A DNA stretch of 64,000 nucleotides from Schmidtea polychroa. Lineage: Eukaryota. Below are positions 40,301 through 64,000 of this stretch, one piece after another. The notes beneath the pieces are model-generated. The model saw nothing but the letters and a program-made list of their open reading frames with translations, had not been told where the DNA came from and ran no database searches. Made by a program: the position numbers and the translations under genes. The DNA lies in the NCBI GenBank assembly GCA_044892525.1, contig CM097887.1:107176397-107240396 (forward strand). Direction: 5' to 3'. Position 1 is the first letter of the stretch, and the number at the start of each line of letters is the position of its first letter.

Positions 40301-41882
40301 TAGATTAAAATTGGCGGAACTATGTAGAGATTATGGTTCATGTCCGAAATTGGAAAGCATTTGGATCCATGCGATCAATAGGCCATTCACTGTGTTTATG
40401 GCGGGATTAGAGTTACCTGTTGAATTAGAAAAACAGTGTACTCTGGAGATATACCACGCTGATGGACGAGAACGGAATATTATGATCCAGGCAGCAGCAG
40501 TTGATACCATAATCGCAGTAGAAATCTTGGATTTCAGGAAGCCATACTCTATAGTTAGCAAAAACGAGCCAACTTGGATTTACAATGTAAATAAAGTTGA
40601 TATACAGCAGTGTAAATCATTTGTGAGGAAGAAGTTAACCAAAGCCGAGGAGGACGAGGCTACAATTTTCATATCGGCAGGTTTTGCCAAATCCCGAATC
40701 GAACTGAAGGAGACAATTATCCAAATCGCAATTATGGATATGAGGGGAAATAATTTATTGAGTGCGGTAGTGACTCCCAGAGACCCTGTAAAACACTACC
40801 AAACGCACCAATACAAGTTAAAGGAACCTGATATTAGAGGAAACCTCGACGAAGATGATTGTTATCCTCTGATAAGATCTGCGATAAGAAAATACTTGTA
40901 GGTATTTTGCTTAAAGATCTGATCTCGGTAGCCAATCTACCAGTGCAGCGGATACTGAGTATTCGTGACCTTTCTGCAAATAAACTATTGGAAACCAGAG
41001 GAGTCCCAATGATTCATGGTCATTACAGATTGGGATTCCCGACGAAAACTTTCCTGCGTACGGTTCCCGGAGAACCAAGGAATTTAGTGGTCACCAATGA
41101 GGCACTGGCGATACGTGCGGTTTATTTACATCTCAGAAACGAATGGTTAGACCATATCACGAAACCCCAGGAGGAATTCATTTCCGTAACTACAGCAGCG
41201 ATAGTTGAGCAGGAAATGACGCAAAAGAGGAGATTACCCGAGCAACCATCTACATCAGGGCAACCCAAGCCTAAGAGAAAATCACCTGTGGACTTACCAC
41301 CGCCTCCAGCTATATCTATTGGAGAAGAAGATGAATATGAAACATGCGTTAGCGAAACGGAGACAGCAAAATCACCCAAACAATCATCGGGAGCTGCCTA
41401 TCAGCCAAAGGATAAATCGGAAAATGCGGTCAGAAAAGAAAATCCAGAAGGAGGCAAGGTGAAAAAGATGTTAAAGAAAATATTACCCATAAAAAGACAA
41501 TTTTTTCAAATTTGTCAGACTTCCCGCCAACGGAAATTCTTCAACGATGTCTTATTTTAAAGCTCATTGCAATACCTTTCGAATGTGGTATAGAAATCCA
41601 TATTATCAATATTATTGGTAAAGATATTATTATTTTTTCAAAATATTATTTTTTCAAGGTCATATTACTATTTTTTCAAAATATTATTTTTTCAAGGTCA
41701 TTCATATTTTCAAGGTCATTCATATTTTCAAGGTCCATCATATTTTTAAGGTCATATTTTAAAATTTAAATTTTTAGAGTTCCCACCAGTGGAATTTATT
41801 TGCCGATGGCTAATTTTGAAGCCCACTGCAATACCTTTCGAATGACGTATAGATATTCATATTATCATTATTATTAATAAAG

Positions 41883-43250
41883 TGTTGGACTAGAACTGAT
41901 TTCTAGACCCAAACTTCTAATTATGACTGAAACGTGTAGGTACACAACATGCACAAAGCAAAAAGTATAGCCAAATATTTAAAACTACACCAATTAAACA
42001 AAAATAATTAAGGGAGAAAACAACAAAAAATGAAAACAGAAAGTAAATAAAATTATACAAAAGCAAGAAGTTTTGTAAAATCAAACTCAAAAATATCCAT
42101 ATAAACATAGAATTACAAAAACAAACTCGAATAACTTAAAAGACGACAAAAACAGTAAAAAATTCCAGAAAAACTCAGAACATTCCATTAAAAATGGCGA
42201 TGACCATCACAAAAGCCAGCTAGAACAATAAAAGTTAGAGAAAATAAATAAATTAGTATTAAAAATAATAAATCTTAAAAAGAAATTCATAAAACATCAG
42301 TTAAAATAAAAATAAAATAGAATTAAAATGGAATGTTCTGGAACCGTTCCAAATCCATCATGGACGGCAAATTAACGAAAAATAATTAAAAAATAAAAAT
42401 ATAAAAATAAAAACAAAAATTATGGCACAAAAATCGCCATCAAAAATAGCAAAATCGTAAAATAGAAAATTCTGGAATAAAAAGAATTCGAGTTTGTTTT
42501 AATGCATCAATACATACACGTGTACTAAATAGGTATATATACTGACACGTTTCAGTCAGAACTTCACTTTTTATGCCAATATTTTATTGTTGAAAATCTT
42601 ACGGAAATTTATAGTGAGTAATTTTTCATTATTATATGTTTTATGAAATCATTTTAATGTTAATATATGTTTCATGTAATCATTTCAATATAATCTACCT
42701 TTAATTAACATATTTAAAGACCTATGATCTTTCTCATTATTTTGTTTTACGACTGATCAGCGACGTCTTAGTGCGTCCCTATTCAGTCCTGCATTCGATA
42801 GTGATGCAGCCTTCTAAAANNNNNNNNNNNNNNNNNNNNNNNNNNNNNNNNNNNNNNNNNNNNNNNNNNNNNNNNNNNNNNNNNNNNNNNNNNNNNNNNN
42901 NNNNNNNNNNNNNNNNNNNNNNNNNNNNNNNNNNNNNNNNNNNNNNNNNNNNNNNNNNNNNNNNNNNNNNNTCGGCCACTTCATGGTTCTACCATGGAGT
43001 TGTGTCGATAAAACCCCTCTGCTATGGCTCCATATACTTTATTTATAGGTCGACAGTGATGTTTCGACTCAACACAACAGTAGGGCTTGTCGTAGCGGTC
43101 ACAGTGGGGCCGTGTAAGCAAGCATTCTTCCCGAGTTCGAATGCATTACATATTTAAACTCAACATTAAAAATCTCGCACAATAGGTTTACACTAAGGTC
43201 ATAATCGAGTAGCATCTCAGACCCAAATTGAACACATATAGTCGGTTGAA
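41883..43250 (+). repeat. Left long terminal inverted repeat (TGTTGG family), with a 5' stem-loop and an internal 14-bp inverted motif TGACTGAAACGTGT (41924-41937 / 42545-42558)
   Basis: It aligns by eye to the reverse complement of ~52270-53630 on both sides of the gap. Shared examples are TGTTGGRCTAGAACTGAYTTCTAGACCCAAAC, TTCAGTCCTGCAT, ACTTCATGGTYCTRCCATGGAGTT, GGTCACAGTGGSGCC and ATTCTTCCCGA. Confidence 0.85.
42820..42971. other. Assembly gap (N run)
   Basis: Run of N characters. Confidence 1.
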
Positions 43251-43296
43251 CGTCATTAAAAAACTCAGTTATACCGGTACGTTTGTCGGACCTCAT

Positions 43297-43324
43297 TGAT
43301 ATATATATATATATATATATATAA
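43297..43324. repeat. (TA)n microsatellite
   Basis: ATATATAT... run. Confidence 0.95.
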
Positions 43325-44321
43325 TTCTTAAGGTTGCTATAAAAGTTTTTCAAAAGTAAACGCAATAATCCACGTAAGGAAGTTTCGACAAGCGTACATA
43401 GTAAAATGAAAATGCTTAATTATTTTAAACGAAATTCATTACTTCTGAATAACTACAGTTCTGAAAATAACGTACATTACCCTGATATAAAATTGTTAAT
43501 ATGTATGATCTCTGAATTCCGAAGTACAATCAAGAATTCAAAGCTGTAATTGTAGATACGTATTGTCATTAAATTATAGAATATGTCTTAAAATTATTTT
43601 TATAATTGTGAACTATTAATGAATCATTAACTTAAAATTTTTCCCTTTTTGAAAAGTATTCTATAAATATTAAATTATTATCTTATTTTAAGATGTAATG
43701 TATAAGGGTATTATAATACTCAAGGACAAATATAATTTCATATTACCCTTAAATTCTCATCTATGAATATTAAATTATAAAATACACCTCGGTGCCACCC
43801 TTAAAATACAAGGTGTTATGGTGTAGTAGTATTGAATGATGACTTTATTAAAATATGGAATACATCCTCAGAAGTATAATGTACAAATGTACCATCGTTC
43901 GGAATTATAGGGGAATTATTATAATTTACATAAATGCCCGAATTAGAAATTATAAATTATAATGTATAGTTCATTTCGCATACGTAAATGTCTGAATTAG
44001 AAAGTTATATATTAAAAATACAGACTGTAAATTATAAGGTATAATACATTCAGCATACATAAATGCCTAAATTGGAAATTAAGTTTTATATTAAAAATAC
44101 AAATTATAAATTATAATTTTATACTACCTCAATGTATAACTTATTTATAATACCTAAATGCCTAAATTAGGAATTAACAATTTCATATCAGGGATATAAA
44201 ATGTAAACTATAACTAATTATATGAAATGTTGGGTTATAAAATATAAAGCGTAAATGATTAAAAATAAATTATATATCTTGATCTTAGAAATATAGGCTA
44301 TATATGATTACAATATTATAT

Positions 44322-45460
44322 AACTATAAAGTATAAATAGTTATATCTGAATCACATAAGTATAATATTCTTAAAATTGCAAACTATAAATAATTATGGA
44401 AAAAATTTTAATTATCAGAATATAAATTATAATTAATTATATATAACTATAAAGTATAACTAATTATATCTGAATCATATAAGTATATTATTCTTAAAAT
44501 TGCAAACTATAAATAATTATGGATAAAATTTTAATTATCAGAATATAAATCATAATTAATTATATATAACTATAAAGTATAAATAGTTATATCTGAATCA
44601 CATAAGTACAATATTCTTAAAATTGCAAACTATAAATAATTATGGAAAAAATTTTAATTATCAGAATATAAATTATAATTAATTATATATAACTATAAAG
44701 TATAACTAATTATATCTGAATCATATAAGTATATTATTCTTAAAATTGCAAACTATAAATAGTTATGGATAAAATTTTAATTATCAGAATATAAATTATA
44801 ATTAATTATATATAACTAGAAAGTATAGATAATTATATCTGAATCATATAAGTATATTATTCTTAAAATTGCAAACCATAAATAATTATTTTAATTATCA
44901 GAATATAAATTATAATTAATTATAAATAACTATAAAGTATAAATAATTATATCTGAATCAATATTATTCTTAAAATTGCAAACCATAAATAATTATACAC
45001 AAAATTTTAATTATCAGAACATAAATTATAATTAATTATATATAATGTTGAGCATAAAATATAAAGTATAAATAGTTATCTATGAATCCTGTAAGTATAT
45101 TATTCTTAAGATGGCAAATTATAAATACTCACGGAAAAATTTTTAATTATCAAAATATAAATTATAATTAATTATATATAAATGTGGAGCGTAAAATATA
45201 AAGTGTGATTCGTTAGATATGAAGCCTATAGGTATGTTATTCTTAAAAAGGTAAACTATAAATAATTATGGATACAATTTTAGTTACAAGAATATAATTT
45301 ATCAATAATTATATTTTGATTATAAAGTAGAGAGTATAAATGAGTATATAGATCATGTAGGTGTCTTGTTCTTAAAAGTATAAACTATAAATGGTGCAAA
45401 ATATAAATCATAATTAATTATATACAACATTCGAAGTATTAAGTATAAATAATTATATAT
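44322..45460 (+). repeat. 123-bp AT-rich minisatellite with a 246-bp dimeric higher-order structure, decaying at both ends
   Basis: AACTATAAAGTATA starts at 44322, 44445, 44568, 44691, 44814 (variant AACTAGAAAGTATA) and 44928. Copies 1/3 and 2/4 share diagnostic alleles. Diverged relatives extend back to ~43900. Confidence 0.92.
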
Positions 45461-46698
45461 TTCAAAAAAAAGAGATAATTATAGATAAAGGTTAGCTACA
45501 AAAATGAATGGTTCACCTGAGTGCCGATCTTAAAAACTTCAATTATAGGTAGTTGGGTGGTAAACAATTATATATAAATTACGAGCGGTCGTAGGTTATC
45601 GAAGTATTAATGGTAAATAACCCTACAAAACTATAAAGTATAGTAATGCAAATCATAAACCCGGAAAATGGCAGGTACCTCATAAAATGTCGTCGAATTT
45701 TATTCTACCCCTAAAATATGTATTATAAAATAAAAATGTAAATTATAAGTGTGAAGATTTTAATGTTTTAGATATTTATATCACTATTGAACGATCAAAA
45801 ATGATTATAGAAATTAAAGTCGGTCGTTAAATTAATTCGCAGACAACTCTATCAGAGGAAGTAGTATTTGACCTGCAAGGACCCAGTAGTGGCCTGTTTT
45901 TAAAGTTACTTGAGACTCTGATTCTCTGAAAACCTCAGTAGGAGTAGGAATCCCAAAACCAATGTCGTTCAGGCATAAATAAGAAAGTCACATTAAAGAG
46001 GTAACGACAAATGATAACCTAAGCTCCTTATAGAATTAACGGGGACGATACAACACATGAATGGATATAGTTTATAAATTAATAAATGACTTACCAAATG
46101 CCCATGAAGCAAATTACCATAAATACCGACAAGCATTAGAAGCAGGTTGGCGTCGGAAAATAAAAGATTTTTTTTCATAAGAGACAGGTTGGAATTATGG
46201 CCAATTTTTATTTCGAAATTAGATTAAAAGGGCATACAACTGAAATGCTGAAAAGGTTGTTATGAATATAATAGCAGCATACACCCCTTGAACGACTTCA
46301 CCGACGAAGGGTATTGGAACACAGTTCGACAATAAGACCGTTCGCCAGCGAAATCTTTCTCTAGGGCTAATTATAGTAAATAATATAAGCTGAATTAAAT
46401 AATTCAGCTTAAATACAAATGTAAATAAATGATGCCCATGATGTAAATAATTACATAATAAGGTTAGCTTAACAAAACAACTAAATGCATGTTTTAATTT
46501 TTCATTAAAAGTTAAACTAATAGATCTAAGCGATTTAGATAAGACGACCACGAGCAAAAAATAAATTTCAGAGTCAAAGAAAATTTTTGTCTCTGGTTGA
46601 ATTAGTAATAAAGTATTTATAAGGAAGATCCCTTTCGATGTTTCTAGGTTGAGGCTATAAGGTGATGATAAGTAATGATTACCCCATTTTTTGGCTAT

Positions 46699-47091
46699 AA
46701 ATTTGGGCGACGGTCAGGAATCCGGATTATTTTAATTAATTTAAAATCAATATTTAATTAATAATAAAATAACAACCATTTAAATATTTTAATTCGAAAC
46801 CAAATTCAAAAAAATATCGAAAATATTTCCATCCGCCAAATTTTCCCTCGAAAGCCACATTCTAAAGGCTATGTAATTCATCTAATTCGACTAATACCCT
46901 TACGACCAGTACCCTTACGACCAGTACCCTTACGACCTGTACCCTTAGGGGGTCAAAACATCCTGTCGGATAAACTCAGAGTATATATAATAAAACTGAT
47001 CAACAATAAGAATTTTTTAGTTTAAATATTGATTAAATATTGATTTTAAATTAATTAAAATAATCCGGATTCCTGACCGTCGCCTAAATTT
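46699..47091. mobile_element. MITE-like element with 60-bp terminal inverted repeats and an internal 15-bp tandem repeat
   Basis: 46699-46758 versus 47032-47091 are inverted with 1 mismatch (AAATTTRGGCGACGGTCAGGAATCCGGATTATTTTAATTAATTTAAAATCAATATTTAAT). (TACCCTTACGACCAG) occurs 3.5 times at 46895-46947. The TSD is ambiguous (the palindrome AAATTT lies on both sides). Confidence 0.7.
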
Positions 47092-47235
47092 GTCATCTAA
47101 CTTACGACAAGGCACACTATCATCATCAGAGGGTAACTATTCGCTCGAACCACTGTTTTACGTCTTAGTAGACTGATAAGAAAGATGAAATTTTAAAAGG
47201 AAAATTACCATTAACCATTTTCATTTAACCACAGA

Positions 47236-47598
47236 ATGTCGCAAGCAAGTGATCCCGACGAAGCCGAATATAGGCAAATGATAACGCGGCTCCGGACCCG
47301 GTACATCTGGTATCGGATACACGACTGGAACCGGGGGTTGGACCTCGATAATTATGGTCCGGTCATTCGAAGCGGCCCAGAGCCCGATGCCCCGGCGTTG
47401 GTGAAAACCGAACCCTTCAACAACGTGTTAAGAGAAGCCCGCGATCGAGCGGCCATCGAGGTAGAAGTGGCCCAGATGCGGCTGAGGAGACTCGAACTCC
47501 AGCTCAAAGCCGAAATGATGGGAGTAACTCCTGAAGAGCTGGAGGAGACAGATGCTCCTCCAAGAAAGCGAGGGAGACCCCGTAAGAACCCTGCTTAA
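47236..47598 (+). CDS. 120-aa GC-rich protein with coiled coil, SUMO-consensus VKTE and C-terminal AT-hook (PRKRGRPRK)
   Basis: Real ATG preceded by an acceptor-like TTTAACCACAG. It aligns without gaps to 49764-50126 (74/120 identical by my count), with many synonymous changes. Confidence 0.8.
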   Translation: MSQASDPDEAEYRQMITRLRTRYIWYRIHDWNRGLDLDNYGPVIRSGPEPDAPALVKTEPFNNVLREARDRAAIEVEVAQMRLRRLELQLKAEMMGVTPEELEETDAPPRKRGRPRKNPA

Positions 47599-47917
47599 TC
47601 CGCCGGCCGTGGCAACTGGGACAAGACTATTTAACTAATTTGATCCAGTGATGTGTTTGCGTTGGACCTTTTTAGCCGCTAATATAACAAATGATAATCT
47701 TTTTTTATTAAATTGTTGACAATATATTTCATTATGTATCTTCGTAGTATAATAAATTATTTGCCTGCTATTACATTTTGGACTTTACGGCTTGTGGGGT
47801 GGATTCATGATGAAGGTGACCCTCCCCATCCTTTATCTATTAATTTTATGAAATTAGTCGAGTCGCCTTTATGCATACGGAAACGAGCGACGAAATTTTT
47901 ATTATCGTTTTCCTTCA

Positions 47918-48346
47918 GTGTACAAGCTACTTGAAAACCTACGCAAGGACCGCGAACAGGCCCAACACCAATCCGAGGATCTTCGAAGTCGAGTTGAGAA
48001 GCTCAAAATCAAGTGCCGAGAACTCGAAGGCACTTGGTTCAGTCCGGCTGAGATGAAGAAACGGACAACGCACATCTCACGGCTCCAGATCCAGGCGGAG
48101 CAAGACCAGCTCGAAATCCAAGCGTTGAAGCTACAAGTACGCTCGCTCGAGAGCAAACTGAATGAAAGATTCATCCAGGACGCCCTCTAAGAGTAGATTC
48201 GCCCACTTCCGGTGGAGCTGGCCCAGATGTACCCACCAGCCTAGGCAAGCAAGCCGAAACGTAAACGTAAACCCGAGACAAATTGAAAAGGGTCTGGCTG
48301 GCCGAGCAGGAGAAATTGAAAGAGGCTGAATCCAATCCACGGCCCT
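47918..48346 (+). pseudogene. Coiled-coil protein exon, left copy; C-terminus disrupted by nonsense codons and a frameshift
   Basis: 47918-48190 is heptad-rich and ~65% identical to 49086-49556. Homology continues past TAA/TAG (IRPLPVELAQMYPPA*ASKPKRKR, then shifted RDKLKRVWLAEQEK). Acceptor TTTTCCTTCAG|TG at 47918. Confidence 0.7.
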
Positions 48347-48487
48347 GAGAGATGTTCGAGAGTGCGACCATCCTGAGCAAACAAACCTTGTAATATAATA
48401 GTGATTAAATAAATTATTCTTGTTGTCTAATGAGTATGTGATTGAACTTTGCCGTTGTCTAAAACAAGGTGATTGGTAGAAAGGCGT

Positions 48488-48922
48488 TTGGGAAAACAAT
48501 CTCGATGAGGGACCGAAACAAATCGGACACGTGCCTTCTATCGGCGTCCGTGAACCCATAGAGTGCTCGACAATTACAGTGCTTGACGCGCTCACTTTTT
48601 GCGAGTACTCAACCCCTTGGTACATTACCAACGTTGATTGCTCAACGGGTACCAAGAGGAAAACAATGTTGTGGTGGGTTACTGATGATCCGATATTTTG
48701 TTCTTTAGTGCTGTTGCTAGCGTAACCCAAGAATACAACGTTAGTGTTTCCGCTTGGTACCCGTTGAGTAATCAACGTTGGTCCTGTACCAAGGGTTGAG
48801 TACTCGCGAAAAGTGAGCGCATCGAGGCACTATAATCGTCGAGCACTCTATGGGTTCACGGACTACCGTTAGAAGGTTTGTGTCCGATTTCCTTAGGTCC
48901 CTTATCAAAATTGTTTTCCCAA
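48488..48922. other. ~435-bp imperfect palindrome: two ~190-bp structured arms around a central hairpin
   Basis: 48488-48682 is the reverse complement of 48722-48922 (roughly 85% by eye). Each arm contains three internal stem-loops. The axis stem is GGGTTAC (48676-82) / GTAACCC (48722-28). Confidence 0.92.
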
Positions 48923-49085
48923 CCTTACGTACAAACTCTCACTTTTCAGGTAATCATAAAATATATCAGTCATTTTTTAACACTACAAAACATGTATTAT
49001 TTTAACAACAAGCAAAGGAAATATCATTTTAATACTACTAGATATATAAAACACCCTACAGAAATACACATCAAGGAATGGAAGT

Positions 49086-49556
49086 TCAACTTGGCCAGTT
49101 GGTGGGGCCGGTTAGTCTCGTCGTAGATATTTGCGAGGAGCCCACTTGCTTTTCGTACTCGGCCAGTCTGGCCCTCTTTAATTTCTCACGAATGTTTCTC
49201 CCCAGCCGCTTCCTCTTGGGCTTATCTTTCGCGGCCGGAGGGTAAATGGCTGCCAACTCCACGGACAATGGCTGGATTTGACTTATGATGGCTCCGTGAA
49301 CCGCTTGTTCATTACGTTCGGTTTCCAACGCGCGGAGTTGGAGCTTCAAGGCCCGGATCTCCATCTGATCCTGCGCGTTTTGAGTCTGCAATTGGAGGAC
49401 CTGTGTCAACTTCTTCTTCATATCCTGGGGACTAAACCAGGTGCTTTCTAGTTCACGGCACCGTCCCTTGAGTTTGTCCACTCGTATACGGAGCTCCTCG
49501 GCCTGTTTTTGGGCTTCTTCTCTGTCCTTTCGTAGATTTTCACATAGTTTGATCAC
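49086..49556 (-). CDS. Coiled-coil protein exon with basic NLS-like tail (KDKPKRKRL), right copy, open
   Basis: 156-codon open frame with a heptad pattern. There is no ATG at the start; instead a splice acceptor TTTATCTAG|TG lies at the same position and phase as in the left copy. Confidence 0.7.
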   Translation of the reverse strand: MIKLCENLRKDREEAQKQAEELRIRVDKLKGRCRELESTWFSPQDMKKKLTQVLQLQTQNAQDQMEIRALKLQLRALETERNEQAVHGAIISQIQPLSVELAAIYPPAAKDKPKRKRLGRNIREKLKRARLAEYEKQVGSSQISTTRLTGPTNWPS

Positions 49557-49763
49557 TAGATAAATTACAATGGTTATCTGCTTGCAGCATTCCCCTCATT
49601 CAATATAATAAGATCAATATCATGCATAACGATACTTTAGCTATTAAATAAGAAATTTATTCAGAAGATAATTTATTAAAAGGAGTAACATATGATCCTC
49701 AACCCATTTTTGATTATTCGTCACAATATACACAATTATAATAAGTCAGGAGTCGGTCCTTGA

Positions 49764-50126
49764 TCACCCTCGGCATTTGCGGGGCCTCCCTCTTTTTCGT
49801 GGGGATGCTTCGGCCTCCTCTAGCTCTTCCACGGGCACTCTTTCTTTTTTCGCCCGGATTTGCAACTCGATCTTCCTGAGTCGCATCTGAGCGGCTTCCA
49901 CCTCCCAGGCCACTTGGTCTCGGGCCTCCTCCAACCGGTTATTCTCCGGTTCCACCTTCACCCACGCCGGGGCATCCACTTCGGGGCCTGTCCGGATTAC
50001 TCGTTCCGCACAATCCAGGTCCCTTCCCTGACCCCACCGATGTATATGTTGCCAGATATACCGGGTCCGGAGACGGGTGATCGTCTGTTGGTCCTCCTCT
50101 GCACTGTGGTTGCTTGATTGTGACAT
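49764..50126 (-). CDS. 120-aa AT-hook/coiled-coil protein, right paralog
   Basis: MSQSSNHS...VKVEP...SPRKRGRPRKCRG. ATG at 50126 is preceded by acceptor-like TGCATTGCAG. Same length as 47236-47598. Confidence 0.8.
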   Translation of the reverse strand: MSQSSNHSAEEDQQTITRLRTRYIWQHIHRWGQGRDLDCAERVIRTGPEVDAPAWVKVEPENNRLEEARDQVAWEVEAAQMRLRKIELQIRAKKERVPVEELEEAEASPRKRGRPRKCRG

Positions 50127-51297
50127 ATCTGCAATGCAAATGTTACGATCTATTCCCAATCAAGGACATACAAATTGAAGTTAGGATAAAATATCTCAGT
50201 TAATTAATAAGTTGCTGAAGTAAGCTAAGTACTTTTAACACGAGGATTGAATTTAATTTAGCGATAAATTTTGATCATTTAAATTAAGAAGACAACAAAA
50301 AAAAATAAAAAAAAATTAATAATTAATAATTTGAGTAAAGTAATGGACTTCTGATTTCATTATTACCTTTTCGTCTTATTAAAATTATTTAGCGTCATTC
50401 AAATTTTCGTTGTTTTATGATAGTCATCATAATTAACGTTAAATAATAAATTTCGATTAAATATATAATTCTAGCTAATTTTGACATACTAATGTAAGTA
50501 AATGTTAAATATTCATATCCTAAACATTGTAATACTATTTCAGCAATAACAGCAGTCGGCCGCACTCCCACAACAATCGCCATTGACCAACATGGATTTA
50601 CAAATTAAAATATGGTATGCTCAGTTAAGCTTGTGGATATTAAATCAACTATATTTCCGACATACCCACTGATCTCACTGGTGTCACTTCAACCGAAACT
50701 CGCGTTAAAGATAGAAAAAGCCGATCTCATCCGAGCAACAAACGAAAAATGTCCATCTCCGATCCCAAAGCTGCCAGGCAAAGAAATAAAGCCTATTTGT
50801 AGTTGGAGTTTCTCTCTTTGAATTTTGTTCGGAATGTCGTGATTAAATAAACTATTAATATTTTTTTTAGTCGCAAAGACAATGATGTAAATAAATTTGG
50901 TGATTAATAAATGTAGGGTACTATTGGGTTTCATCTTTTGATCTGACTTGAATACAAGTTTGTCCATAATTTTTACAACTTGTTCTACTTTTATTACTTT
51001 AACGGGGTTGTGGAAATTATTCCACCTAGGGTCTTGAGGGGAAAGATTATAGTATTTGTTGTCTCTCAGATCTATATATATAAACACACATACACATATA
51101 TACATATCCACCCACACATATACATATAGGGATATAATTGAAGTTAATAAAATTCGATCGTTTTCAGGGGGGTGTTACTAAAAATAGATTTTAGTGATTT
51201 TCCGCAATTTTATTGGAAGGTAGGGCCATTGACGCTAAATTTAGAGCTAGGGGAATCCTAAAATCAATAATTTGTTTATAATTTTATTTTACGAAAT

Positions 51298-51670
51298 AAT
51301 TATTTAAAATTCATTACTAATAATATTGGTAATAATAATACGATAATGTTACGAACGACAATATTAATATTAATAATGGCAATAATCATAATGATAATAA
51401 TGATAATAATGATAATAATATTAATAATGACAGCCAANNNNNNNNNNNNNNNNNNNNNNNNNNNNNNNNNNNNNNNNNNNNNNNNNNNNNNNNNNNNNNN
51501 NNNNNNNNNNNNNNNNNNNNNNNNNNNNNNNNNNNNNNNNNNNNNNNNNNNNNNNNNNNNNNNNNNNNNNNNNNNNNNNNNNNNNNNNNNNNNNNNNNNN
51601 NNNNNNNNNNNNATCATAAGAATATAATATTGATAATATGAGCAGTACTACTATGATACTGATAATGATT
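51298..51670. repeat. (ATA/ATG)n microsatellite flanking an assembly gap (N 51438-51612)
   Basis: ATAATAATGATAATAATG runs on both sides of the N stretch. Confidence 0.9.
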
Positions 51671-52269
51671 AACTGTAAATGTTCATAATTTTATTCTTAT
51701 ACCTGTTTGACGACTATACAAGTATTTACCGTCAATATTTAGAAGCATGTCCTATATAGATAATTATAATTTATCAATTTGAAAATTTATATGTTTATAA
51801 TTCATGATTTTCCATCTTCCAATTTATAATTTGTAATTTACAAATTTATATTTTCTGATTTCTAGTTTTTCATTTCATAATTTTATATTTTATGATTTAG
51901 AATTCTATATTTTGTAATTTGTAATTTTCCTTTTTACTATTTATAATTTTATATTTTACACATTTATATTTCATAATTTCCAATGTTATTATTCATAATT
52001 TACAATTCTATGATCTACAATTTCTAATTTTGTATTTGATAATTCGAGTTCGTAATTTGCGCTATTAGGTTTGTAATATCTACATTTACCTTATAATTAA
52101 TTTAAAAACCTATTTAGATTGAGTTCTACTTAGACGTAGGCCGAATATCTTTATCGTTTCTATTACTTCGATTACCATAAGATTACAAAACCTAATTCGG
52201 CATGTGTCTAAGCATAACTAAAGTTGTTATTATTGATCAAACAGCTACATTACTGTGATTGCAGAATTG

Positions 52270-53630
52270 TGTAAGTTTAGGTATGAGCTCTACTCAGATT
52301 AATGCCTTAGTGTAGAGATGTTGTCTATGATTTTAAATGTTAAAATTAATTGTGTATTAAGCAATGGTCGGGAAGAATATTGCTTCCATGGCGCCACTGT
52401 GACCACTTCCACAAACCTTAGTGTTGTGTGCTGAGTCAACCATTTACGGTTGACCTTAGATAAATACAAAGAGTCAGACGGAGGGTTTCCTCGACCTAAC
52501 TCCATGGCAGGACCATGAAGTAGTTCGACCCCCGAAAGACCCGAACAAAAAAAGGGACGATATAATATCAGATTGCTATAATATTGATAATGCATGTGCG
52601 ATAAAAATTAGATGCAGGACTGAACGACGACGCAGGAATACCAGTACGCCGTCGAACCTTCGTACATCACTGGAGAAAATCAAAAGCAAGAAACATCAAA
52701 AAATGCAATTACTTCGATTTCCCCTACATAAATAATAACAAATTGAAAAAGTGATTCATCAATGCAATAAAAATCAACAAATAAAATAATAATAAATTGA
52801 AAAAGTAATTCATTAATGTAATAAAAAATCAACAAATAAATTAATAACAGATTGAAAAAGTAATTCATTAGTGTAATAAAAAAAATCAACAATTCTTACT
52901 ATTTTCGTTGGCAATATTTTCTTCAAAAATTGGCATAAAATAGTGATTGATTGTGACTGAAACGTGTCAGTATATATACCTATTTTGTACACGTGTATGT
53001 ATTGATGCATTAAAACAAACTCGAATTCTTTTTATTCCAGAACTTTCTATTTTGTAATTTCGATATTTTAAATGGCAATTTTTGTGCCATAATTTTTGTT
53101 TTTATTTTTAAATTTTTATTCTTTAATTATTTTTCATTAATTTTACGTCCATGATGGATTTGGAACGGTTCCAGAACATTCTATTTCACTTTTAATTTAA
53201 TTTTTATTTTAATTGGTGTTTTATGGACTTTTTTTTACGAATTTTCATTTTTATTACTAATTTATTGATTTTGTCTAAATTTTATTGTTTAAGATAGCTT
53301 TTATGATGGTCATCGCCATTTTTATGGAATGTTCTGGGTTTTTCTGGAATTTTTTACTGTTTTTACCATCTTTTAAGTTATTCGAGTTTGTTTCTTGTAA
53401 CTCTATGTTTATTTGATCATTTTTGAGTTAGATTTTGTATAACTTCTTGCTATTGGTATGATTTTATTTAATTTCGGTGTTTATGCTTTTGTTGTTTTCT
53501 CCTTGAATTAATATTGTTTATTTGATGTAATTTTAATATTTAACTACACTTTTTGCTTTTTGCATGTTGTGTACCTACACCTTTCAGTCACAATTCCAGT
53601 TTGGGTCTAGAAGTCAGTTCTAGCCCAACA
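52270..53630 (-). repeat. Right long terminal inverted repeat (TGTTGG family)
   Basis: Reverse-complement homology to 41883-43250. It ends ...GTTCTAGCCCAACA at 53630. Confidence 0.85.
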
Positions 53631-53680
53631 GTTGTATGCTGGGTTACGCTGGTAACAGCACTTAAACATTCAACCACCAG
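53631..53680 (+). other. Terminal hairpin module (GGGTTAC...GTAACCC-A-CCA), homologous to the central axis 48668-48739
   Basis: GTTGTATGCTGGGTTACGCTGGTAACAGCACTTAAACATTCAACCACCAGTAACCCACCA versus the reverse complement of the axis, GTTGTATTCTTGGGTTACGCTAGCAACAGCACTAAAGAACAAAATATCGGATCATCAGTAACCCACCA. Confidence 0.85.
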
Positions 53681-53815
53681 TAACCCACCAAAAGATATTA
53701 TTTTTTCAAAATATTATTTTTCAAGGTCGTTTATTTTTTCAAGGTTCAAAATCTGTTCAAAGCTACTGTTTTAGTCAATACGAACCAGATGAAATAATCG
53801 GTTCCATCGCCAAAA

Positions 53816-54612: not shown

Positions 54613-56328
54613 ATGTTATTTATATTAGTATGTAAACTAATGTGGGCTCAAATGAGCATCGGTAAAATCAGACATCAGCGTATGTCGACTTTGGTTACCC
54701 TGCGAGGGTCTATCACGAAAGTGATAAAAGCTGTTAATTATTTTATTTTTAGAAAAATGAATTATAACAGAGAACCAAAACCACCAGTCAAAGCAAATCG
54801 ACGACACCCATTGGCAACGTACAATTCCCAGACTCGAGTTGAAACTGAAGTATATAGTACATACAAAGAAGAGTACGTATACAGGTTCATCGGAACTACG
54901 GTCGCAGCAAAAATGAATCACCTCACCTCAAACTATTGGTATTATCCCAGGAGAGTGGATATTCCAAACGATTTCAAATTCCCAGGAGGGCCTCGAAGGC
55001 AAATGATGATAACGGTTATAAATAACCAAGGTAGATTAAAATTGGCGGAACTATGTAGAGATTATGGTTCATGTCCGAAATTGGAAAACATTTGGATCCA
55101 TGCGATCAATAGGCCATTCACTGTGTTTATGGTGGGATTAGAGTTACCTGTTGAATTAGAAAAACAGTGTACTCTGGAGATATACCACGCTGATGGACGA
55201 GAACGGAATATTATGATCCAGGCAGCAGCAGTTGATACCATAATCGCAGTAGAAATCTTGGATTTCAGGAAGCCATACTCTATAGTTAGCAAAAACGAGC
55301 CAACTTGGATTTACAATGTAAATAAAGTTGATATACAGCAGTGTAAATCATTTGTGAGGAAGAAGTTAACCAAAGCCGAGGAGGACGAGGCTACAATTTT
55401 CATATCGGCAGGTTTTGCCAAATCCCGAATCGAACTGAAGGAGACAATTATCCAAATCGCAATTATGGATATGAGGGGAAATAATTTATTGAGTGCGGTA
55501 GTGACTCCCAGAGACCCTGTAAAACACTACCAAACGCACCAATACACGTTAAAGGAACCTGATATTAGAGGAAACCTCGACGAAGATGATTGTTATCATC
55601 TGATAAGAAAGATCTGCGATAAGAAAATACTTGTAGGTATTTTGCTTAAAGATCTGATCTCGGTAGCCAATCTACCAGTGCAGCGGATACTGGGTATTCG
55701 TGACCTTTCTGCAAATAAACTATTGGAAACCAGAGGAGTCCCAAAGATTCATAGTCATTACAGATTGGGATTCCCGACGAAAACTTTCCTGCGTACGGTT
55801 CCCGGAGAACCAAGGAATTTAGTGGTCACCAATGAGGCACTGGCGATACGTGCGGTTTATTTACATATCAGAAACGAATGGTTAGACCATATCACCATAC
55901 CCCAGGAGGAATTCATTTCCGTAACTACAGCAGCGATAGTTGAGCAGGAAATGACGCAAAAGAGGAGATTACCCGAGCAACCATCTACATCAGGGCAACC
56001 CAAGCCTAAGAGAAAATCACCTGTGGACTTACCACCGCCTCCAGCTATATCTATTGGAGAAGAAGATGAATATGAAACATGCGTTAGCGAAACGGAGACA
56101 GCAAAATCACCCAAACAATCATCGGGAGCTGCCTATCAGCCAAAGGATAAATCGGAAAATGCGGTCAGAAAAGAAAATCCAGAAGGAGGCAAGGTGAAAA
56201 AGATGTTAAAGAAAATATTACCCATAAAAAGACAATTTTTTCAAATTTGTCAGACTTCCCGCCAACGGAAATTCTTCAACGATGGCTTATATAACGCTAT
56301 TAACATTTTGAATGCTAAGTACTGTTAG
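54613..56328 (+). CDS. 571-aa protein: unknown N-terminal domain, degenerate DEDDh 3'-5' exonuclease fold (~55396-55885), and a basic/Pro-rich tail with a bipartite NLS-like motif
   Basis: IFISAGF...IIQIAIMDMRGNNLLSAVVTPRDPVKHYQTHQY.LKEPDI...ICDKKILVGILLKDL...IRDLS...VTNEALAIRAVY parallels REX4/ISG20 (VALDCE...ARVSIVN..G.VLYD.YVKP...VTDYRT..SGI...LKGRILVGH...NDL...IRDTS...SVEDARAAM.LY). The Exo I acids are lost. Tail: KRRLPEQPSTSGQPKPKRK. The true start codon is uncertain. Confidence 0.7.
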   Translation: MLFILVCKLMWAQMSIGKIRHQRMSTLVTLRGSITKVIKAVNYFIFRKMNYNREPKPPVKANRRHPLATYNSQTRVETEVYSTYKEEYVYRFIGTTVAAKMNHLTSNYWYYPRRVDIPNDFKFPGGPRRQMMITVINNQGRLKLAELCRDYGSCPKLENIWIHAINRPFTVFMVGLELPVELEKQCTLEIYHADGRERNIMIQAAAVDTIIAVEILDFRKPYSIVSKNEPTWIYNVNKVDIQQCKSFVRKKLTKAEEDEATIFISAGFAKSRIELKETIIQIAIMDMRGNNLLSAVVTPRDPVKHYQTHQYTLKEPDIRGNLDEDDCYHLIRKICDKKILVGILLKDLISVANLPVQRILGIRDLSANKLLETRGVPKIHSHYRLGFPTKTFLRTVPGEPRNLVVTNEALAIRAVYLHIRNEWLDHITIPQEEFISVTTAAIVEQEMTQKRRLPEQPSTSGQPKPKRKSPVDLPPPPAISIGEEDEYETCVSETETAKSPKQSSGAAYQPKDKSENAVRKENPEGGKVKKMLKKILPIKRQFFQICQTSRQRKFFNDGLYNAINILNAKYC

Positions 56329-59217
56329 TGCAGCTTTTGGTAGTATTCTCAAGACAGATTTCTACTATCTTGGTACCCTTACCATAAAAAAGTAATCCTT
56401 TAGGATTCTAACATTTCAACAATCATCATTTTCTTTTTTGTAGTTCCATAATATTTTTCGCCTTTTATAATCTTCTGTTAACTTATCGTTACCAGATATT
56501 TACCACACCGAACCGGGACGTCTGACAACCTTAGTTAAGGTAAGTATATCTTCATCATAAATAAAATTGACTACATATACCGAATTCATTCAAAGTGAAT
56601 AAACAAAGATGTTCAACAAATAAAAATGAATACAATTTTCGTTGTTTAAAATGCAAAAACAAGTTTAAATATCACGGAACATTTTATGGACAAAATTAAT
56701 ATACGCCATATCTCAATGTTACTTTTATACAAGATTTGTGCTCTTTTTGATATTTGACTAATTATCCAGTCAAATGTGACCAAGATATGGTGATACCGAC
56801 TGAAGTATTAGAATAAGTCTAAGAGTGGTGGGTTCCTTATAAAGCAAGCTTTGATTCCTGTAGATAATCGTGATGATATTGCTTAGAATATGTCAATTTA
56901 AAAATAAAAGAAACTAAGGGGGATATTTTATAAATATATAAATATTTTAATCATGTAATAATTCGTCATTTGAAATTAATAAAAAGAATTGGCCTAATTC
57001 AATTATTAATTTAATTATTAAATCAATAATCTAATCAATATTATGCAATGAAATGATAAATATTTATCCCAAGTCTAACCATAATTTCCAAACACAAAAA
57101 GCGATTTTTCGGATCCATAAATTAATTTTGAAATCGAGTAAATTTAGATATTTCAACAATAATAATTTAAATAATTAAATCAATAAATGAAAATCAACTT
57201 TTAAATAAAATTGAATTATTTACCTGAATTAGCAGAAATAACTTCTTCAACCTAACTTTTAACCTAACCTGTTAAATCATAAATTTTCGGCAAAATCGAA
57301 TTTATTCCCCATAGTAAAACTCCACCAATCCCCATTAAAATCAAACCAGCAGTCTATTGATAAGTTTTAGAAAATATAAATTCACTCAAACTTAAAATTT
57401 ACCAAAATAAATCCAACAACAATTATGAGTATACATTTAATTATTCCTGTTACAAGTGGCCTTACATTCAGCAAGATTGACGTATCTCATTTCTCTAGAT
57501 TCACAACAACTTAATGGAAACTTGTAGCCAACTAAAAATTATAATAATTGATCAAGAGAAGTTTTTAGAATTATTAAGTAATTACGTTTGTGACCAACCC
57601 AATTTTCTGCCTTCTCGAAATCGGTGTAATTGTACAAGCCGCAACATTGGACCTATGAATACAAATAATTGAAATTGCCAGCATTTAAAACACTTTCAAA
57701 TAATTATTTTATTAATCAAATGATAAAGAAAATGTTAAAATGAACAACATTTGCTTTGACCAGTTTGAAAGCTTCTAAAAAAATTTAATTCTTTAATTAT
57801 TTATTTGGTAATTTTATTTAATGTATAATTTTTATGTAATGTTTTAAGCTAATAAATTTTTATATTCACTTTAGTTTTAGTTATATTTCTTTTTAATTGT
57901 TTTTTTTTGCCCTTTGTTTCTCTTTTTTATTTTTATGCTTATTAATTATGAACGATAGTGTGAGTTGAAATCCAGCATATCGTCGGGTTGCTCAGATGGG
58001 TGGGTATGCTGGCATCTTCAATGACTCAGCAGATTTCGGGCAGTAACGTGAATACTTCTCTATGAGTCCGTCGCTGTATGTATTTTTAGTGGAACATTGG
58101 TTAGAATTAGAAATATAGACCATTTATTTAAATATTTTGAAGGATAAGTTAAATATTCACAAATATTACAGAAAACATAGAGCAACATATATTTACAGAA
58201 AAATAAGGGCGGATCCCTGCACAAAACATTTGAAGATAACATTAGAAAACATCCAGAAATAAGAACCACAAATAAATGAATACATGACAATAATCAAACA
58301 ACAGTATAGATAATGAATAATGACGTAAGACCTTCTATCGGCAGTCCAAAACCCGAAAATGAAAATATCATGAGGAGTAGTTTTAGCAGTAGAGCTCACC
58401 TGCTCATTGATTTTCAACCATTGTATACAACACCAACATGTTATCACCATGGATACAGGGATGGTCTAAAGTATAATAATCACGAAGGCGTTTAGGAAGG
58501 AGTTGATTCAAAATCCATCATTACCCCTAACATATTTATAAAATGACACACCCCTAAGTGACCCAGCAATTTTGGGGCGTGGATAATACATGAGTACGAG
58601 TTATTTGTGAAACTTTAAGGTACCTTATTATCTGATTTTTATTTTTTATGTGTTCTAAACGTTAAAATGTATCTCATGTACCACTGCTTGCATTTTTTAG
58701 TTTATTATTTATCATTTTTTGTTTTAATTAACTTTGTTTTATTTGGTATTTTTCATTTATTTTAAATATCTTGGGGCTTTTCTTTGTTATATAGCTTTGC
58801 CTCGGGGGATCACTTAGGTTTTGTAGGTTAATTATTCATTTTAGATCATTTTAATTTACATTACTTTTCTCGCAATCTGAATTACATGATTCTGCCCAAC
58901 ACTCTGGTAAGCAATGGACCACACTCACCTTTTTGTTAAACAATGAACATTTCTTTTCTACAGTAGAATTCACTGGATTTTACAATAGGAGCTGGGATTT
59001 TAAGACTGGCTTTCATTGCATTGTCAATTTCTTCATTTATGAAAGGAGTTAAAATATTATGGTTTTCATATTAAATTCATTCTTCAAGCATCGTATGTTA
59101 GAAGAACAGCTCTTGGTAAAATAAATCACAAAGATGGAAATTGTCTTTTTTTACTTAATGTGAAATATATTTACAGTAGTAACATCCTTCAACTTGACAA
59201 TGCAAGATCACATAGTG

Positions 59218-59704: not shown

Positions 59705-59959
59705 ACATAGTGCGAAGAAGATGTTGAGGAAGAATGAGGAAGAAATGTTCTTCTTCGCCAACTATATAATCCGTATATTAATCATTCAAATTATTAATTA
59801 GTTATTTCTAAGCTAAATTATTTGCCGAGTAAAAATATTTAAGTTAAAATCATGAAAAATGGTGAATCGCAGGTAATCCACATTTTACTCGTTCGTGTCA
59901 TTTTCGACCCAACCCAAGATACAATGACTTGTTTAACCAACTGAAACCCGTTGAGTGAT

Positions 59960-60433
59960 CAATTATTTTAATTTTTATATTATTTTATTTTGATTTTTTG
60001 CTAATTTAGTTATTAAATTTTCATTTTTTAGTTAATTTCGATAAATTATTTGGCGGCCATGATGGATTTAGCCATTTTATAGAATATTCTAGTTTTCTGT
60101 TCATTTATGTTATAATTTTTATCTCTAATTCATTTTCATCTTTCCAATTTTCATCTCTACTTTCTCTTATCGCCATTAATTCAAACTTGTTTACTTATGT
60201 TATGTATCTACCCTGTATTTGAGCTGATTTCATGTAATACTTATTGCTTTTGTTTCACTTTATTTTACTTTTGTTAGTCATTTTGATGTTCTGTAAATTC
60301 TTTTAGGTTGTTTACATGGTGTTTCGTTGTGTCTTCAGTTTGGCTATACTTGATGTTGCGTCTGCTTGCTATATTCAGACGTATTTCAGCTACGCTTCCA
60401 CTATGTGGGCTTGAAATCAGTTTTTGGCCAACA
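59960..60433 (-). repeat. Third, more diverged copy of the TGTTGG-family repeat (left boundary approximate)
   Basis: The reverse complement begins TGTTGGCCAAAAACTGATTTCAAGCCCACA and shares AAGTATAGCCAAA and AATCCATCATGG.CG.CAAAT with 41883-42400. Confidence 0.65.
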
Positions 60434-60596
60434 GAAAGTTAAAAATAAATTCAATGGACGCACGTATAAAGGCACAACTAAGGGAGGGACAAATACCCCC
60501 GAGTGTCAAAATCTGGTTTAAAAACTATTTTTATAGTGTATATTTTTGACAATAGTTTTAATGCGATTATTTTATAGTCTACATACGGAATAAATT

Positions 60597-60880
60597 TGTA
60601 AATATATTGGCTACTGTTAGAAGAAGACATAGTTTCACAGAAATCTTTATTCACTACAAAAATCTAAACGGAACACACAATCGTTATACTATTTATAGTA
60701 CATTGAATTGCGTAATCTACAAAAGGGAGAATTATTAGTTTAAGTGATACTGTTGACACAGAAGACAAACATACTTACTTAATTTATTTATACAAGCATT
60801 CCCGCATCATTCAATAGATATCAAGGTCTAGTGACCTGGTTATGTAAGTAATTCGTTGGAAATTATTATATCATCTTACA
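60597..60880 (-). repeat. 3' LTR of the Gypsy element (distal boundary uncertain, 60597 or 60615)
   Basis: Starts TGTAAG immediately after the PPT. It contains TATAAATA and AATAAA on the minus strand. Candidate ...ACA ends are at 60615 and 60597. Confidence 0.7.
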
Positions 60881-63800: not shown

Positions 63801-64000
63801 TTAACTTTATTATTAATTATATCGATATTCATAATCTTATCAATTTTGTTATTAATTTCATATAAACTATATTCAAAATAATTTTCAAAGTCAAAACATT
63901 CACAATCATTCATAATTACATCATTAATTTTTAAATCATCTTTAAATTCATTCATTACGGAAATCTTGAAATCACAAGCATTCAAATTCAAACATTCTGT
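60876..64000 (-). pseudogene. pol: Ty3/Gypsy pol (protease-RT-RNase H-integrase), disrupted; the element continues beyond the window
   Basis: Motifs in Gypsy order: PR LLDTGA, RT ICLDFRALN / YCFNRMPFG / YLDD, RNase H DTDAS...ELLAI...TDHKAI, IN HKDLCH..CEQC, IDFCGP, HSDRG, GLVER and GPY. Lesions: frameshifts near 62745 and 62325, stops at 62454 and 62033, and a 14-bp insertion near 61005. Confidence 0.96.
60881..60893 (-). promoter_or_regulatory. Polypurine tract (AAATGGAGGGGGA)
   Basis: Purine run abutting the LTR's TG. Confidence 0.85.

What the first reader, a model, noticed from the sequence alone, without database searches (positions are those of the whole stretch)
41883..53680. Unclassified bipartite palindromic element: two paralogous halves joined tail-to-tail, inserted with a 4-bp TSD
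Seen: the array unit is cut at AAAG and resumes 11.8 kb later at AAAG, with TG...CA ends. The insert mirrors itself about ~48700. From each end it runs: ~1.4-kb TGTTGG repeat, A-rich (left) or T-rich (right) low-complexity repeats, AT-hook ORF, coiled-coil ORF, 190-bp arm. The halves are only ~62-65% identical in protein, with unrelated introns, so this is not a recent fold-back duplication. No RT, DDE transposase, tyrosine recombinase or HUH-Rep is visible. Known classes share parts of this layout: DIRS (ITR plus internal complement of the right-end extension), Penelope/Athena-type elements (inverted ends, coiled-coil ORFs) and hairpin-ended linear DNA replicons. None fits entirely. Inference: a non-autonomous member of an undescribed mobile element or virus-like family whose units pair end-to-end.
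Basis: partly seen in the sequence, partly recalled or inferred. Interest (0 to 1): 0.9.

Follow-up and report, generated by a model that had tools for sequence, protein, structure and literature searches.

The report
Two nested copies of one transposon
The 11.8-kb "mirror-image" insert is two related copies of an unclassified mobile element, one inserted upside-down into the tail of the other, each with its own 4-bp target duplication, so the palindrome is an accident of nesting.

Summary
The insert is real. It spans 41883-53690, not 53680. It interrupts one unit of a 2866-bp tandem array and is flanked by a duplicated AAAG; 14 other units keep the uninterrupted site. Its ends read TG...CA.

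It is not a bipartite palindromic element. The right "half" (48672-53630, minus strand) is a complete unit with the same two termini as the whole insert, and it is flanked by its own 4-bp duplication, GTTG. It sits 60 bp from the 3' end of the left unit (41883-48671 plus 53631-53690). The right unit's own uninterrupted P-S junction serves as an "empty site" for the left unit's split junction. A third, internally deleted copy (59860-60433) has the same two termini and stands alone.

The unit runs: 5' TGTTGG, about 1.35 kb of conserved non-coding DNA, tandem repeats, one spliced gene (AT-hook plus coiled coil), a 190-bp block, then a 60-68-bp hairpin ending CCACCA. The gene is under purifying selection (dN/dS about 0.1). 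No enzyme gene is present. No relatives turned up in any database I could search.

The likeliest reading is a non-autonomous element moved in trans by an integrase-type DDE enzyme. Nested solo LTRs are the main rival.

The parts
41879..41882 (.). Left copy of the AAAG target-site duplication of the outer (L) unit
53691..53694 (.). Right copy of the AAAG target-site duplication of the outer (L) unit
41883..48671 (+). Outer unit L, left piece: 5' terminus TGTTGG, T region, tandem repeats, gene and P block. It ends with GTTG. Includes the N run 42820-42971.
53631..53690 (+). Outer unit L, right piece: the 3' terminal hairpin segment S, starting with the second GTTG and ending CCACCA
48672..53630 (-). 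Inner unit R, complete and inverted relative to L. On its own strand it runs 5' TGTTGG at 53630 to CCACCA 3' at 48672. Includes the N run 51438-51612.
48668..48671 (.). Left copy of the GTTG target-site duplication made by insertion of R into L
   Evidence: the only columns shared by the two L pieces when aligned to R's uninterrupted junction
53631..53634 (.). Right copy of the GTTG target-site duplication made by insertion of R into L
41883..43236 (+). T region of L. The outer ~700 bp are 83-88% identical to R, ~400 bp in the middle do not align, and an inner ~250-bp block is 74% identical. It is non-coding.
52268..53630 (-). T region of R, with no gap
43947..45460 (+). Tandem repeats of L (75-bp and 123-bp periods), A-rich on the unit's strand
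51764..51979 (-). Tandem repeats of R (59-bp period), weakly similar to those of L
47236..48345 (+). Gene of L. Exon A covers 47236-47581 and ends in an AT-hook; a phase-1 GT-AG intron follows; exon B starts at 47919 (coiled coil). The first ~205 codons are open. The part matching the last third of R's coding region has 3 stops and 1 frame change.
49086..50126 (-). Gene of R. Exon A covers 50126-49781, then a phase-1 intron at the same codon with an apparent GC-AG donor, then exon B at 49555-49086. Both exon reading frames are open (about 271 codons if spliced as modelled).
48488..48667 (+). P block of L, a conserved non-coding 3' subterminal block about 85% identical to P of R
48740..48922 (-). 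P block of R
48672..48739 (-). S segment of R (3' terminal hairpin). This is the 'spacer' of the apparent central palindrome.
46699..47091 (.). Small inverted-repeat (MITE-like) element with 71-nt arms at 94%, nested in L upstream of its gene and absent from R
59860..60433 (-). Third, short copy of the family, about 574 bp. It keeps about 470 bp of the T end, the last ~35 bp of P, and S, with the same TGTTGG and CACCA termini. Its flanks match at 3 of 4 bases.

Best explanation
The insert is a nested pair of two related copies of one transposable-element family.

The unit, read on its own strand, is: 5' TGTTGG, then T (about 1.35 kb of non-coding DNA), then tandem repeats, then one spliced gene for a small AT-hook plus coiled-coil protein, then P (about 190 bp), then S (a 60-68-bp hairpin) ending CCACCA 3'.

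Unit L inserted into the 2866-bp array and duplicated AAAG. Unit R, from a diverged subfamily, inserted in the opposite orientation into L at the P/S boundary, 60 bp from L's 3' end, and duplicated GTTG. The order of the two events is unknown. That placement puts T of L opposite T of R, and P of L opposite P of R. It leaves L's S hairpin as a 60-bp 'extension' complementary to R's S in the centre. This part is shown.

The mechanism is inferred, at about 0.5. TG...CA ends, almost no terminal inverted repeat (5 of 6 bases) and 4-bp staggered-cut duplications at unrelated targets point to insertion by a retroviral-integrase-type DDE enzyme supplied in trans. In that respect it works like Ginger2 or an LTR-element integrase. 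T-outer and P+S would be the cis-acting ends. The encoded protein would be a DNA-binding accessory factor of the element rather than its catalyst.
For: - Homology among the three copies starts exactly at TGTTGG and stops exactly at CACCA, with unrelated flanks.
- R is flanked by GTTG on both sides. When L's two pieces are aligned, kept apart, to R's own uninterrupted P-S junction, they overlap only in those four columns.
- L is flanked by AAAG, and 14 uninterrupted sites remain in the array.
- L and R are colinear along their whole length: T, repeats, exon A, exon B, P.
- The short copy is a lone single unit.
- Between L and R, coding pN is 0.24 and pS is 0.73 (saturated), giving dN/dS of about 0.1-0.15. 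Third codon positions differ about twice as often as first and second.
- T-inner shows no codon periodicity.
- No Pfam domain appears in any ORF of 70 aa or more.
- Ginger2 elements and Gypsy LTRs have TGTNR termini, and Ginger2 makes 4-bp TSDs (PMC2836005).
- All four junctions lie in gap-free sequence.
Against: - Only three copies could be examined, all from one window.
- No enzyme-bearing partner was found, so mobilisation in trans is an inference.
- The 3' end reads TGGTG in reverse complement and does not fit TGTNR.
- There is no 50-180-bp TIR as in Ginger2. The targets (AAAG, CAAC, TTTC/TTTT) do not match the RTATAY preference.
- The 5' and 3' end regions share no motifs.
- Insertion of R exactly at the P/S boundary of a relative could be chance or a target preference. 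One case cannot tell.
- Continuity across the right N gap is untested.
Confidence: 0.85

Rival explanations
1. The three copies are solo LTRs of an LTR-retrotransposon family with very long, gene-bearing LTRs. One solo LTR, or a once-complete element since collapsed by LTR-LTR recombination, is nested inside another.
For: The ends are TG...CA, with only a 5-of-6-base terminal inverted repeat and otherwise asymmetric ends. TSDs are 4 bp. The 5' end fits the TGTNR pattern of Gypsy LTRs. The short copy, at 574 bp, has a typical LTR size. A Gypsy-like element is present in the window.
Against: - No pair of units in direct orientation flanks an internal region in the window.
- The neighbouring Gypsy-like pol has its own purine tract followed by a different TGT start near 60880, not the T terminus.
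- Units of 5.0 and 6.8 kb would be extreme for LTRs.
- Each carries a complete spliced gene under purifying selection, with polyadenylation-like signals upstream of P. That is unusual for an LTR.
Confidence: 0.12
2. One reading: an obligate bipartite palindromic element, or a virus-like replicon, whose two paralogous halves are joined tail-to-tail and move as one.
For: The composite has TG...CA ends and one AAAG TSD. It could have transposed as a whole using L's two termini after R had nested. The mirror layout is real.
Against: The inner half has complete termini and its own GTTG duplication. The outer half's P-S junction is split exactly there. A single unit occurs alone. The arms are far too diverged for a hairpin-ended or fold-back replication form, with saturated dS. 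No replication or recombination gene is present. No relative appears in IMG/VR.
Confidence: 0.03
3. This is a variant of the main explanation. The nesting is not chance: the family preferentially inserts at the base of the S hairpin of resident copies, so tail-to-tail pairs recur in the genome.
For: R landed exactly at the P/S boundary, 60 bp from L's end. The duplicated CAAC, read on R's strand, is the reverse complement of bases 2-5 of the element's own terminus, so the junction forms a small palindrome.
Against: There is one case only. The other two insertions are in unrelated AT-rich DNA. The finding was picked because it looked palindromic, which is a selection effect.
Confidence: 0.1
4. 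The arrangement is a scaffolding or assembly artefact that joins pieces of different copies across the two N runs.
For: Two gaps of estimated length lie inside the insert. The surrounding array is highly repetitive.
Against: All four diagnostic junctions lie within contiguous sequence. The two AAAG junctions sit on different contigs yet match one array site. The two GTTG junctions sit on different contigs yet match one L site. The left gap is bracketed by blocks colinear with the gap-free right copy.
Confidence: 0.03

Closest known systems
Ginger2/TDD DNA transposons (Gypsy-integrase-like transposase; PMC2836005)
   Same: 4-bp target-site duplication. The 5' terminus fits TGTNR (TGTTG). Insertions are in AT-rich DNA. 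Non-autonomous relatives sharing only the ends are known for Ginger.
   Different: There is no 50-180-bp terminal inverted repeat, only TGTTGG against TGGTGG. The 3' end does not fit TGTNR. The targets do not fit RTATAY. No integrase-like transposase is present in any of the three copies, and none could be linked to them.
Solo LTRs of Gypsy/BEL-type LTR retrotransposons
   Same: TG...CA ends with a very short imperfect inverted repeat, asymmetric ends, and 4-6-bp TSDs. The short copy has an LTR-like size.
   Different: No paired direct copies, PBS or PPT were seen. The units are 5-7 kb and hold a complete spliced gene under purifying selection. The adjacent Gypsy-like element uses a different LTR start.
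Nested transposon insertions and internally deleted (MITE-like) derivatives. This is general transposon biology, stated from my own knowledge.
   Same: One element sits inside another with its own TSD. A short copy retains only the two ends.
   Different: Nothing in kind. The only unusual points are that the host and the guest are relatives, and that the guest sits 60 bp from the host's end in inverted orientation, which mimics a palindrome.
DIRS elements (inverted terminal repeats plus an internal complementary region)
   Same: Superficially, long inverted ends and an internal segment complementary to a terminal extension.
   Different: TSDs are present. There is no RT, tyrosine recombinase or methyltransferase. 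The 'internal complement' is simply the second unit's own terminus. The internal segment does not encode the joined ends of the insert (read).
Foldback elements and hairpin-ended or rolling-hairpin replicons
   Same: The apparent long inverted arms, and a central palindrome with an asymmetric spacer.
   Different: The arms belong to two separate insertion units. They differ at saturation in silent sites. No replication protein is present.

Membership tests
Ginger2/TDD | 4-bp (or 5-bp) target-site duplication | tested here: met
   AAAG and GTTG are perfect; the third copy matches at 3 of 4
Ginger2/TDD | Both termini follow TGTNR | tested here: not met
   The 5' end is TGTTG in all three copies. 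The 3' end reads TGGTG in reverse complement. Pattern taken from PMC2836005.
Ginger2/TDD | Terminal inverted repeats of about 50-180 bp | tested here: not met
   Only 5 of the first 6 bases match between the ends. The end regions share no k-mers of 9 or more.
Ginger2/TDD | Integrase-like DDE transposase with an H2C2 zinc finger | tested here: not met
   No Pfam hit in any ORF of 70 aa or more of the insert. Whether autonomous relatives exist cannot be tested with these tools.
LTR retrotransposon (solo LTR) | TG...CA ends and a 4-6-bp TSD | tested here: met
LTR retrotransposon (solo LTR) | Full-length relatives with two direct LTRs enclosing PBS, gag/pol and PPT | not testable with these tools
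   No such arrangement exists in the window. The adjacent Gypsy-like pol is followed by its own purine tract and a different TGT start. No access to the rest of the genome.
DIRS | RT plus tyrosine recombinase; insertion without a TSD | tested here: not met
   No such domains. TSDs are present.
DIRS | Internal complementary region that templates the joined termini | tested here: not met
   The central segment matches the 60-bp right end only and is flanked by P, not by the complement of the left terminus. It is explained as unit R's own terminus.
Foldback / bipartite palindromic element | The two long inverted arms are the ends of one mobile unit | tested here: not met
   The right arm ends 60 bp inside the insert. 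It belongs to a unit with its own termini and TSD.
Hairpin-ended / rolling-hairpin replicon (parvovirus-like) | Near-identical arms able to fold back; a Rep/NS1-type nickase | tested here: not met
   Arms are 61-64% identical in the coding parts, and the introns do not align. No HUH domain. No hits in IMG/VR.
Penelope/Athena-like | Penelope-type RT, with or without GIY-YIG | tested here: not met
   No RT domain in the insert
Helitron | No TSD; 5' TC ... CTRR 3' ends; insertion between A and T | tested here: not met
   TSDs are present and the ends are TG...CA. The defining features are from my own knowledge.

The most novel reading that the evidence does not exclude
The T...S units may represent an undescribed superfamily of eukaryotic mobile elements. 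Its features would be asymmetric, hairpin-bearing ends, unusually long conserved cis regions (about 700 bp at the 5' end and about 260 bp at the 3' end), and a single conserved gene for a small orphan AT-hook/coiled-coil protein. That protein has been kept under purifying selection across a divergence that saturates silent sites. The family may also tend to insert into the terminal hairpin of resident copies. Under this reading, the enzyme that moves the units is either a hijacked integrase or something not yet recognised.
Probability: 0.12. Interest if true: 0.6.

Novelty: new member of a known kind. Interest (0 to 1): 0.25.

Why it matters
The result removes a false lead. What looked like a new class of palindromic, virus-like replicon is a nested insertion, a routine event. 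The way it was resolved is a useful check for similar "bipartite" findings: an inner TSD, a paralogous uninterrupted junction, and a lone third copy.

What remains of modest interest is the family itself. It has integrase-style ends but no enzyme, long conserved non-coding end regions, and an orphan DNA-binding-like protein under clear purifying selection. That protein has no relative among 1.84 billion representative proteins. If a genome-wide census found many such units and no autonomous partner, it would show how an enzyme-less element can persist for a long time.

Tried and rejected
**Searches for relatives of the element's proteins**
- Exon A against 1.84 billion representatives: 0 hits.
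- Exon B word-indexed search: 0 hits.
- PDB sequence search: 0 hits.
- Pfam and PHROGs: only coiled-coil noise.
- Degenerate-pattern scans of JGI metagenomes and IMG/VR with the exon-A alignment: none.
- Exact 22-mer from the P block in IMG/VR and in metagenomes: none.

**Identifying the organism**
- The array ORF has no homologues.
- The Gypsy integrase gives only unnamed metagenome proteins at 45-59% identity. The best named hits are about 30% (flatworms and others). The organism was not identified.

**RNA and structure**
- Rfam: nothing at gathering or E-value thresholds. No tRNAs.
- The AlphaFold model of exon A is helices only, with pLDDT 64. That is too weak for a fold search, so none was run.

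**Ideas considered and dropped**
- A circular, quasi-dumbbell replicon with flip/flop loops, and a DIRS-like circle junction. The inner GTTG duplication and the lone third copy explain the same features more simply.
- The short copy as the 3' LTR of the neighbouring Gypsy-like element. That element has its own purine tract and TGT start upstream.
- T-inner as a coding exon. It shows no codon periodicity and has many indels.
- Shared binding motifs between the two ends. None were found.
- The bacterial promoter/terminator scan is irrelevant for a eukaryote.

- Searching the joined exons A+B; the exons were searched apart.
- Joining L's two pieces across the nested unit; they were compared apart.
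- Filling the N runs.
Full report
**Setting.** The window is eukaryotic, AT-rich DNA. Bases 1-41882 and 53691 to about 56300 are a tandem array of a 2866-bp unit, about 15 units that are 99-100% identical. There are no tRNAs and no Rfam matches. A degenerate Gypsy-like pol lies at 61004-63991 on the minus strand. The N runs are 42820-42971 and 51438-51612. I did not fill them.

**The observation.**
- Aligning the array unit to both borders shows that the unit is cut after position AAAG (41879-41882) and resumes with the same AAAG (53691-53694) (read).
- Fourteen other units carry the uninterrupted site.
- The insert is therefore 41883-53690, which is 11,808 bp including the estimated gaps. It starts TGTTGG and ends CCACCA.
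- The inverted long repeats, the central palindrome, the A-rich and T-rich tandem repeats and the two convergent pairs of ORFs are all present.
- The right long repeat stops at 53630. The last 60 bp are a distinct segment that matches, in inverted orientation, the asymmetric spacer of the central palindrome.

**What resolves it.**
- A relaxed search of the insert against the rest of the window found a third relative at 59860-60433 (read).
- On the plus strand this relative reads: an S-like segment, the first ~35 bp of P' and the last ~470 bp of T', ending CCAACA.
- On its own (minus) strand it is therefore a short unit that starts TGTTGG and ends CACCA.
- Alignments of both ends of the three copies, each with 12 bp of flank, show that homology starts exactly at TGTTGG and ends exactly at CACCA. 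The flanks are unrelated. A terminal pattern finds exactly these three 5' ends in the window.
- Applying this unit definition to the insert, 48672-53630 is a complete unit (R) on the minus strand. What remains, 41883-48671 plus 53631-53690, is a complete unit (L) on the plus strand, split 60 bp before its 3' end.
- R is flanked by GTTG on both sides (48668-48671 and 53631-53634).
- I aligned L's two pieces, kept apart, to R's own uninterrupted P-S junction. They abut and overlap only in those four columns. R thus supplies a paralogous empty site for L.
- So there are two insertion events, each with a perfect 4-bp duplication. The third copy's flanks match at 3 of 4 bases.

**How nesting explains the mirror.** R sits inverted just after L's P block. 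This has three consequences.
- P of L faces P of R across R's terminal hairpin S, giving the "190-bp arms plus spacer".
- T of L faces T of R, giving the "1.4-kb TIRs".
- L's own S is left at the far right as a 60-bp "extension" complementary to the centre, giving the "DIRS-like" feature.

Nothing further is needed to explain the symmetry about ~48700.

**Anatomy of a unit.** L and R are colinear over their whole length.

| Segment | L versus R |
|---|---|
| T-outer, about 700 bp | 83-88% identical |
| Middle of T, about 400 bp | does not align |
| T-inner, about 250 bp | 74% identical |
| Tandem repeats | related family, about 60-66% |
| Exon A | 64% nucleotide, 63% protein |
| Intron | does not align |
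| Exon B | 61% protein |
| P, about 190 bp | about 85% identical |
| S | 79% identical |

- T-inner has many indels and no codon periodicity, so it is non-coding.
- T-outer contains three concentric short inverted-repeat pairs that are kept in both copies. It folds better than shuffles as single-stranded DNA, with z of -4.4 and -3.2.
- The 3' 260 bp is not significantly structured overall (z -1.5), but it ends in the S hairpin.
- The two end regions share no motif beyond TGKTGG.
- L also holds a 393-bp MITE-like inverted-repeat element that R lacks.

**The gene.**
- In both copies exon A (115 codons plus one base) ends inside an AT-hook. Exon B begins after an AG, so the split codon is the same in both.
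- The donor is GT in L and GC in R.
The exons were searched separately.
- Between L and R, pN is 0.24 while pS is 0.73, which is saturated. This gives dN/dS of about 0.1-0.15. Third codon positions differ about twice as often as first and second. The protein has therefore been under purifying selection in both lineages.
- R's two exon reading frames are open.
- In L the first ~205 codons are open. The stretch matching R's last third shows 3 stops and 1 frame change (counts only).
- The protein has no Pfam, PHROG or PDB relative, and no relative among 1.84 billion representative proteins.
- The AlphaFold model is all-helical and of low confidence.
- No other ORF of 70 aa or more in the insert has a domain, so there is no enzyme gene.
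- The gaps are unlikely to hide one. L's gap is matched by gap-free sequence in R, and R's gap falls where L has only repeats.

**Mechanism (inferred).**
- TG...CA ends, a minimal terminal inverted repeat and 4-bp duplications at unrelated targets (AAAG, CAAC, TTTC/TTTT on the units' strands) are the signature of integrase-type DDE enzymes.
- Ginger2 DNA transposons and Gypsy LTRs share the TGTNR start, and Ginger2 makes 4-bp TSDs (PMC2836005).
- The family fails several Ginger2 criteria: TIR length, the 3' terminus, the target motif and the transposase. I therefore say it works like an integrase substrate. I do not file it as Ginger2.
- Solo LTRs are the main rival. The adjacent Gypsy-like element has its own purine tract and a different TGT start, and a complete spliced gene inside a 5-7-kb LTR would be unusual. 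A census is needed to exclude this reading.
- The conserved T-outer and P+S blocks are more conserved than the coding sequence, while neutral parts no longer align. They are therefore probably cis-acting.
- The short copy's 61-67% identity fits an old, decaying deletion derivative.

**Assembly.** All four diagnostic junctions lie within contiguous sequence. The paired TSD copies lie on different contigs yet agree with each other. An artefact is therefore unlikely, although continuity across 51438-51612 is untested.

**Limits.**
- There are three copies, all from one window. No genome-wide view was possible.
- The organism was not identified.
- No Repbase or Dfam library was available, so "unclassified" means unclassified by the tools at hand.

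- In my private reasoning I called to mind, from memory, a generic tRNA sequence, a T-arm motif and a generic polypurine-tract example as mental comparators.
- While reading L's degenerate 3' coding stretch by eye, I saw where its frame is interrupted. Only counts are given in notes, script output and this report.

Noticed in passing
window 1-41882 and 53691-~56300: Tandem array of a 2866-bp unit, about 15 units at 99-100% identity. Its long ORF is uninterrupted (571 aa, 54613-56328) only in the last unit; in the inner units it is split into two ORFs (339 and 233 aa). Each unit also has a 66-aa protein-kinase-like ORF. The 571-aa protein has no homologues in the protein collection.
   Followed up: partly
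window 41664-41736: The array unit just left of the insert carries about 56 extra bases, a local repetition of the TTTTCAAGGTCAT-like motif, that the other units lack.
   Followed up: no
window 46699-47091: A 393-bp MITE-like element with 71-nt inverted arms (94%) sits in unit L upstream of its gene and is absent from unit R. This is a third level of nesting. Its TSD was not resolved.
   Followed up: partly
window 60434-63991 (minus strand): Gypsy-like element. The protease-RT, RNase H and integrase parts fall into at least four ORFs, so the frame is interrupted at least three times. A purine tract followed by a TGT start near 60880 looks like the start of its 3' LTR. The short T...S copy (59860-60433) lies downstream of that point, so it is probably inserted in that LTR.
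   Followed up: partly
window 41921-42561 and 52950-53594: T-outer holds three concentric short inverted-repeat pairs (22, 15 and 14 nt) kept in both units, including a 14-nt motif present once in each orientation per unit. As single-stranded DNA it folds with z of -4.4 and -3.2 against shuffles. Function unknown.
   Followed up: partly
window 47200-50200: The two genes and the P/S blocks are 43-47% G+C. The rest of the insert is 15-32% and the array is 33-42%.
   Followed up: no
window 49779-49780 (minus strand): The predicted intron of unit R's gene has a GC rather than a GT donor, at the position homologous to the GT donor of unit L.
   Followed up: no
window 57027-57947 and 58692-58796: Weak (58-77%) AT-rich similarities to the T region and the tandem repeats of the units. 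These may be further decayed fragments of the family or just low-complexity matches.
   Followed up: no
window 61004-62032 (minus strand): The closest relatives of the Gypsy-like integrase are unnamed proteins from environmental metagenomes (45-59% identity). The best named hits, from flatworms, a firefly and nematodes, are about 30%. The source organism could not be identified.
   Followed up: yes
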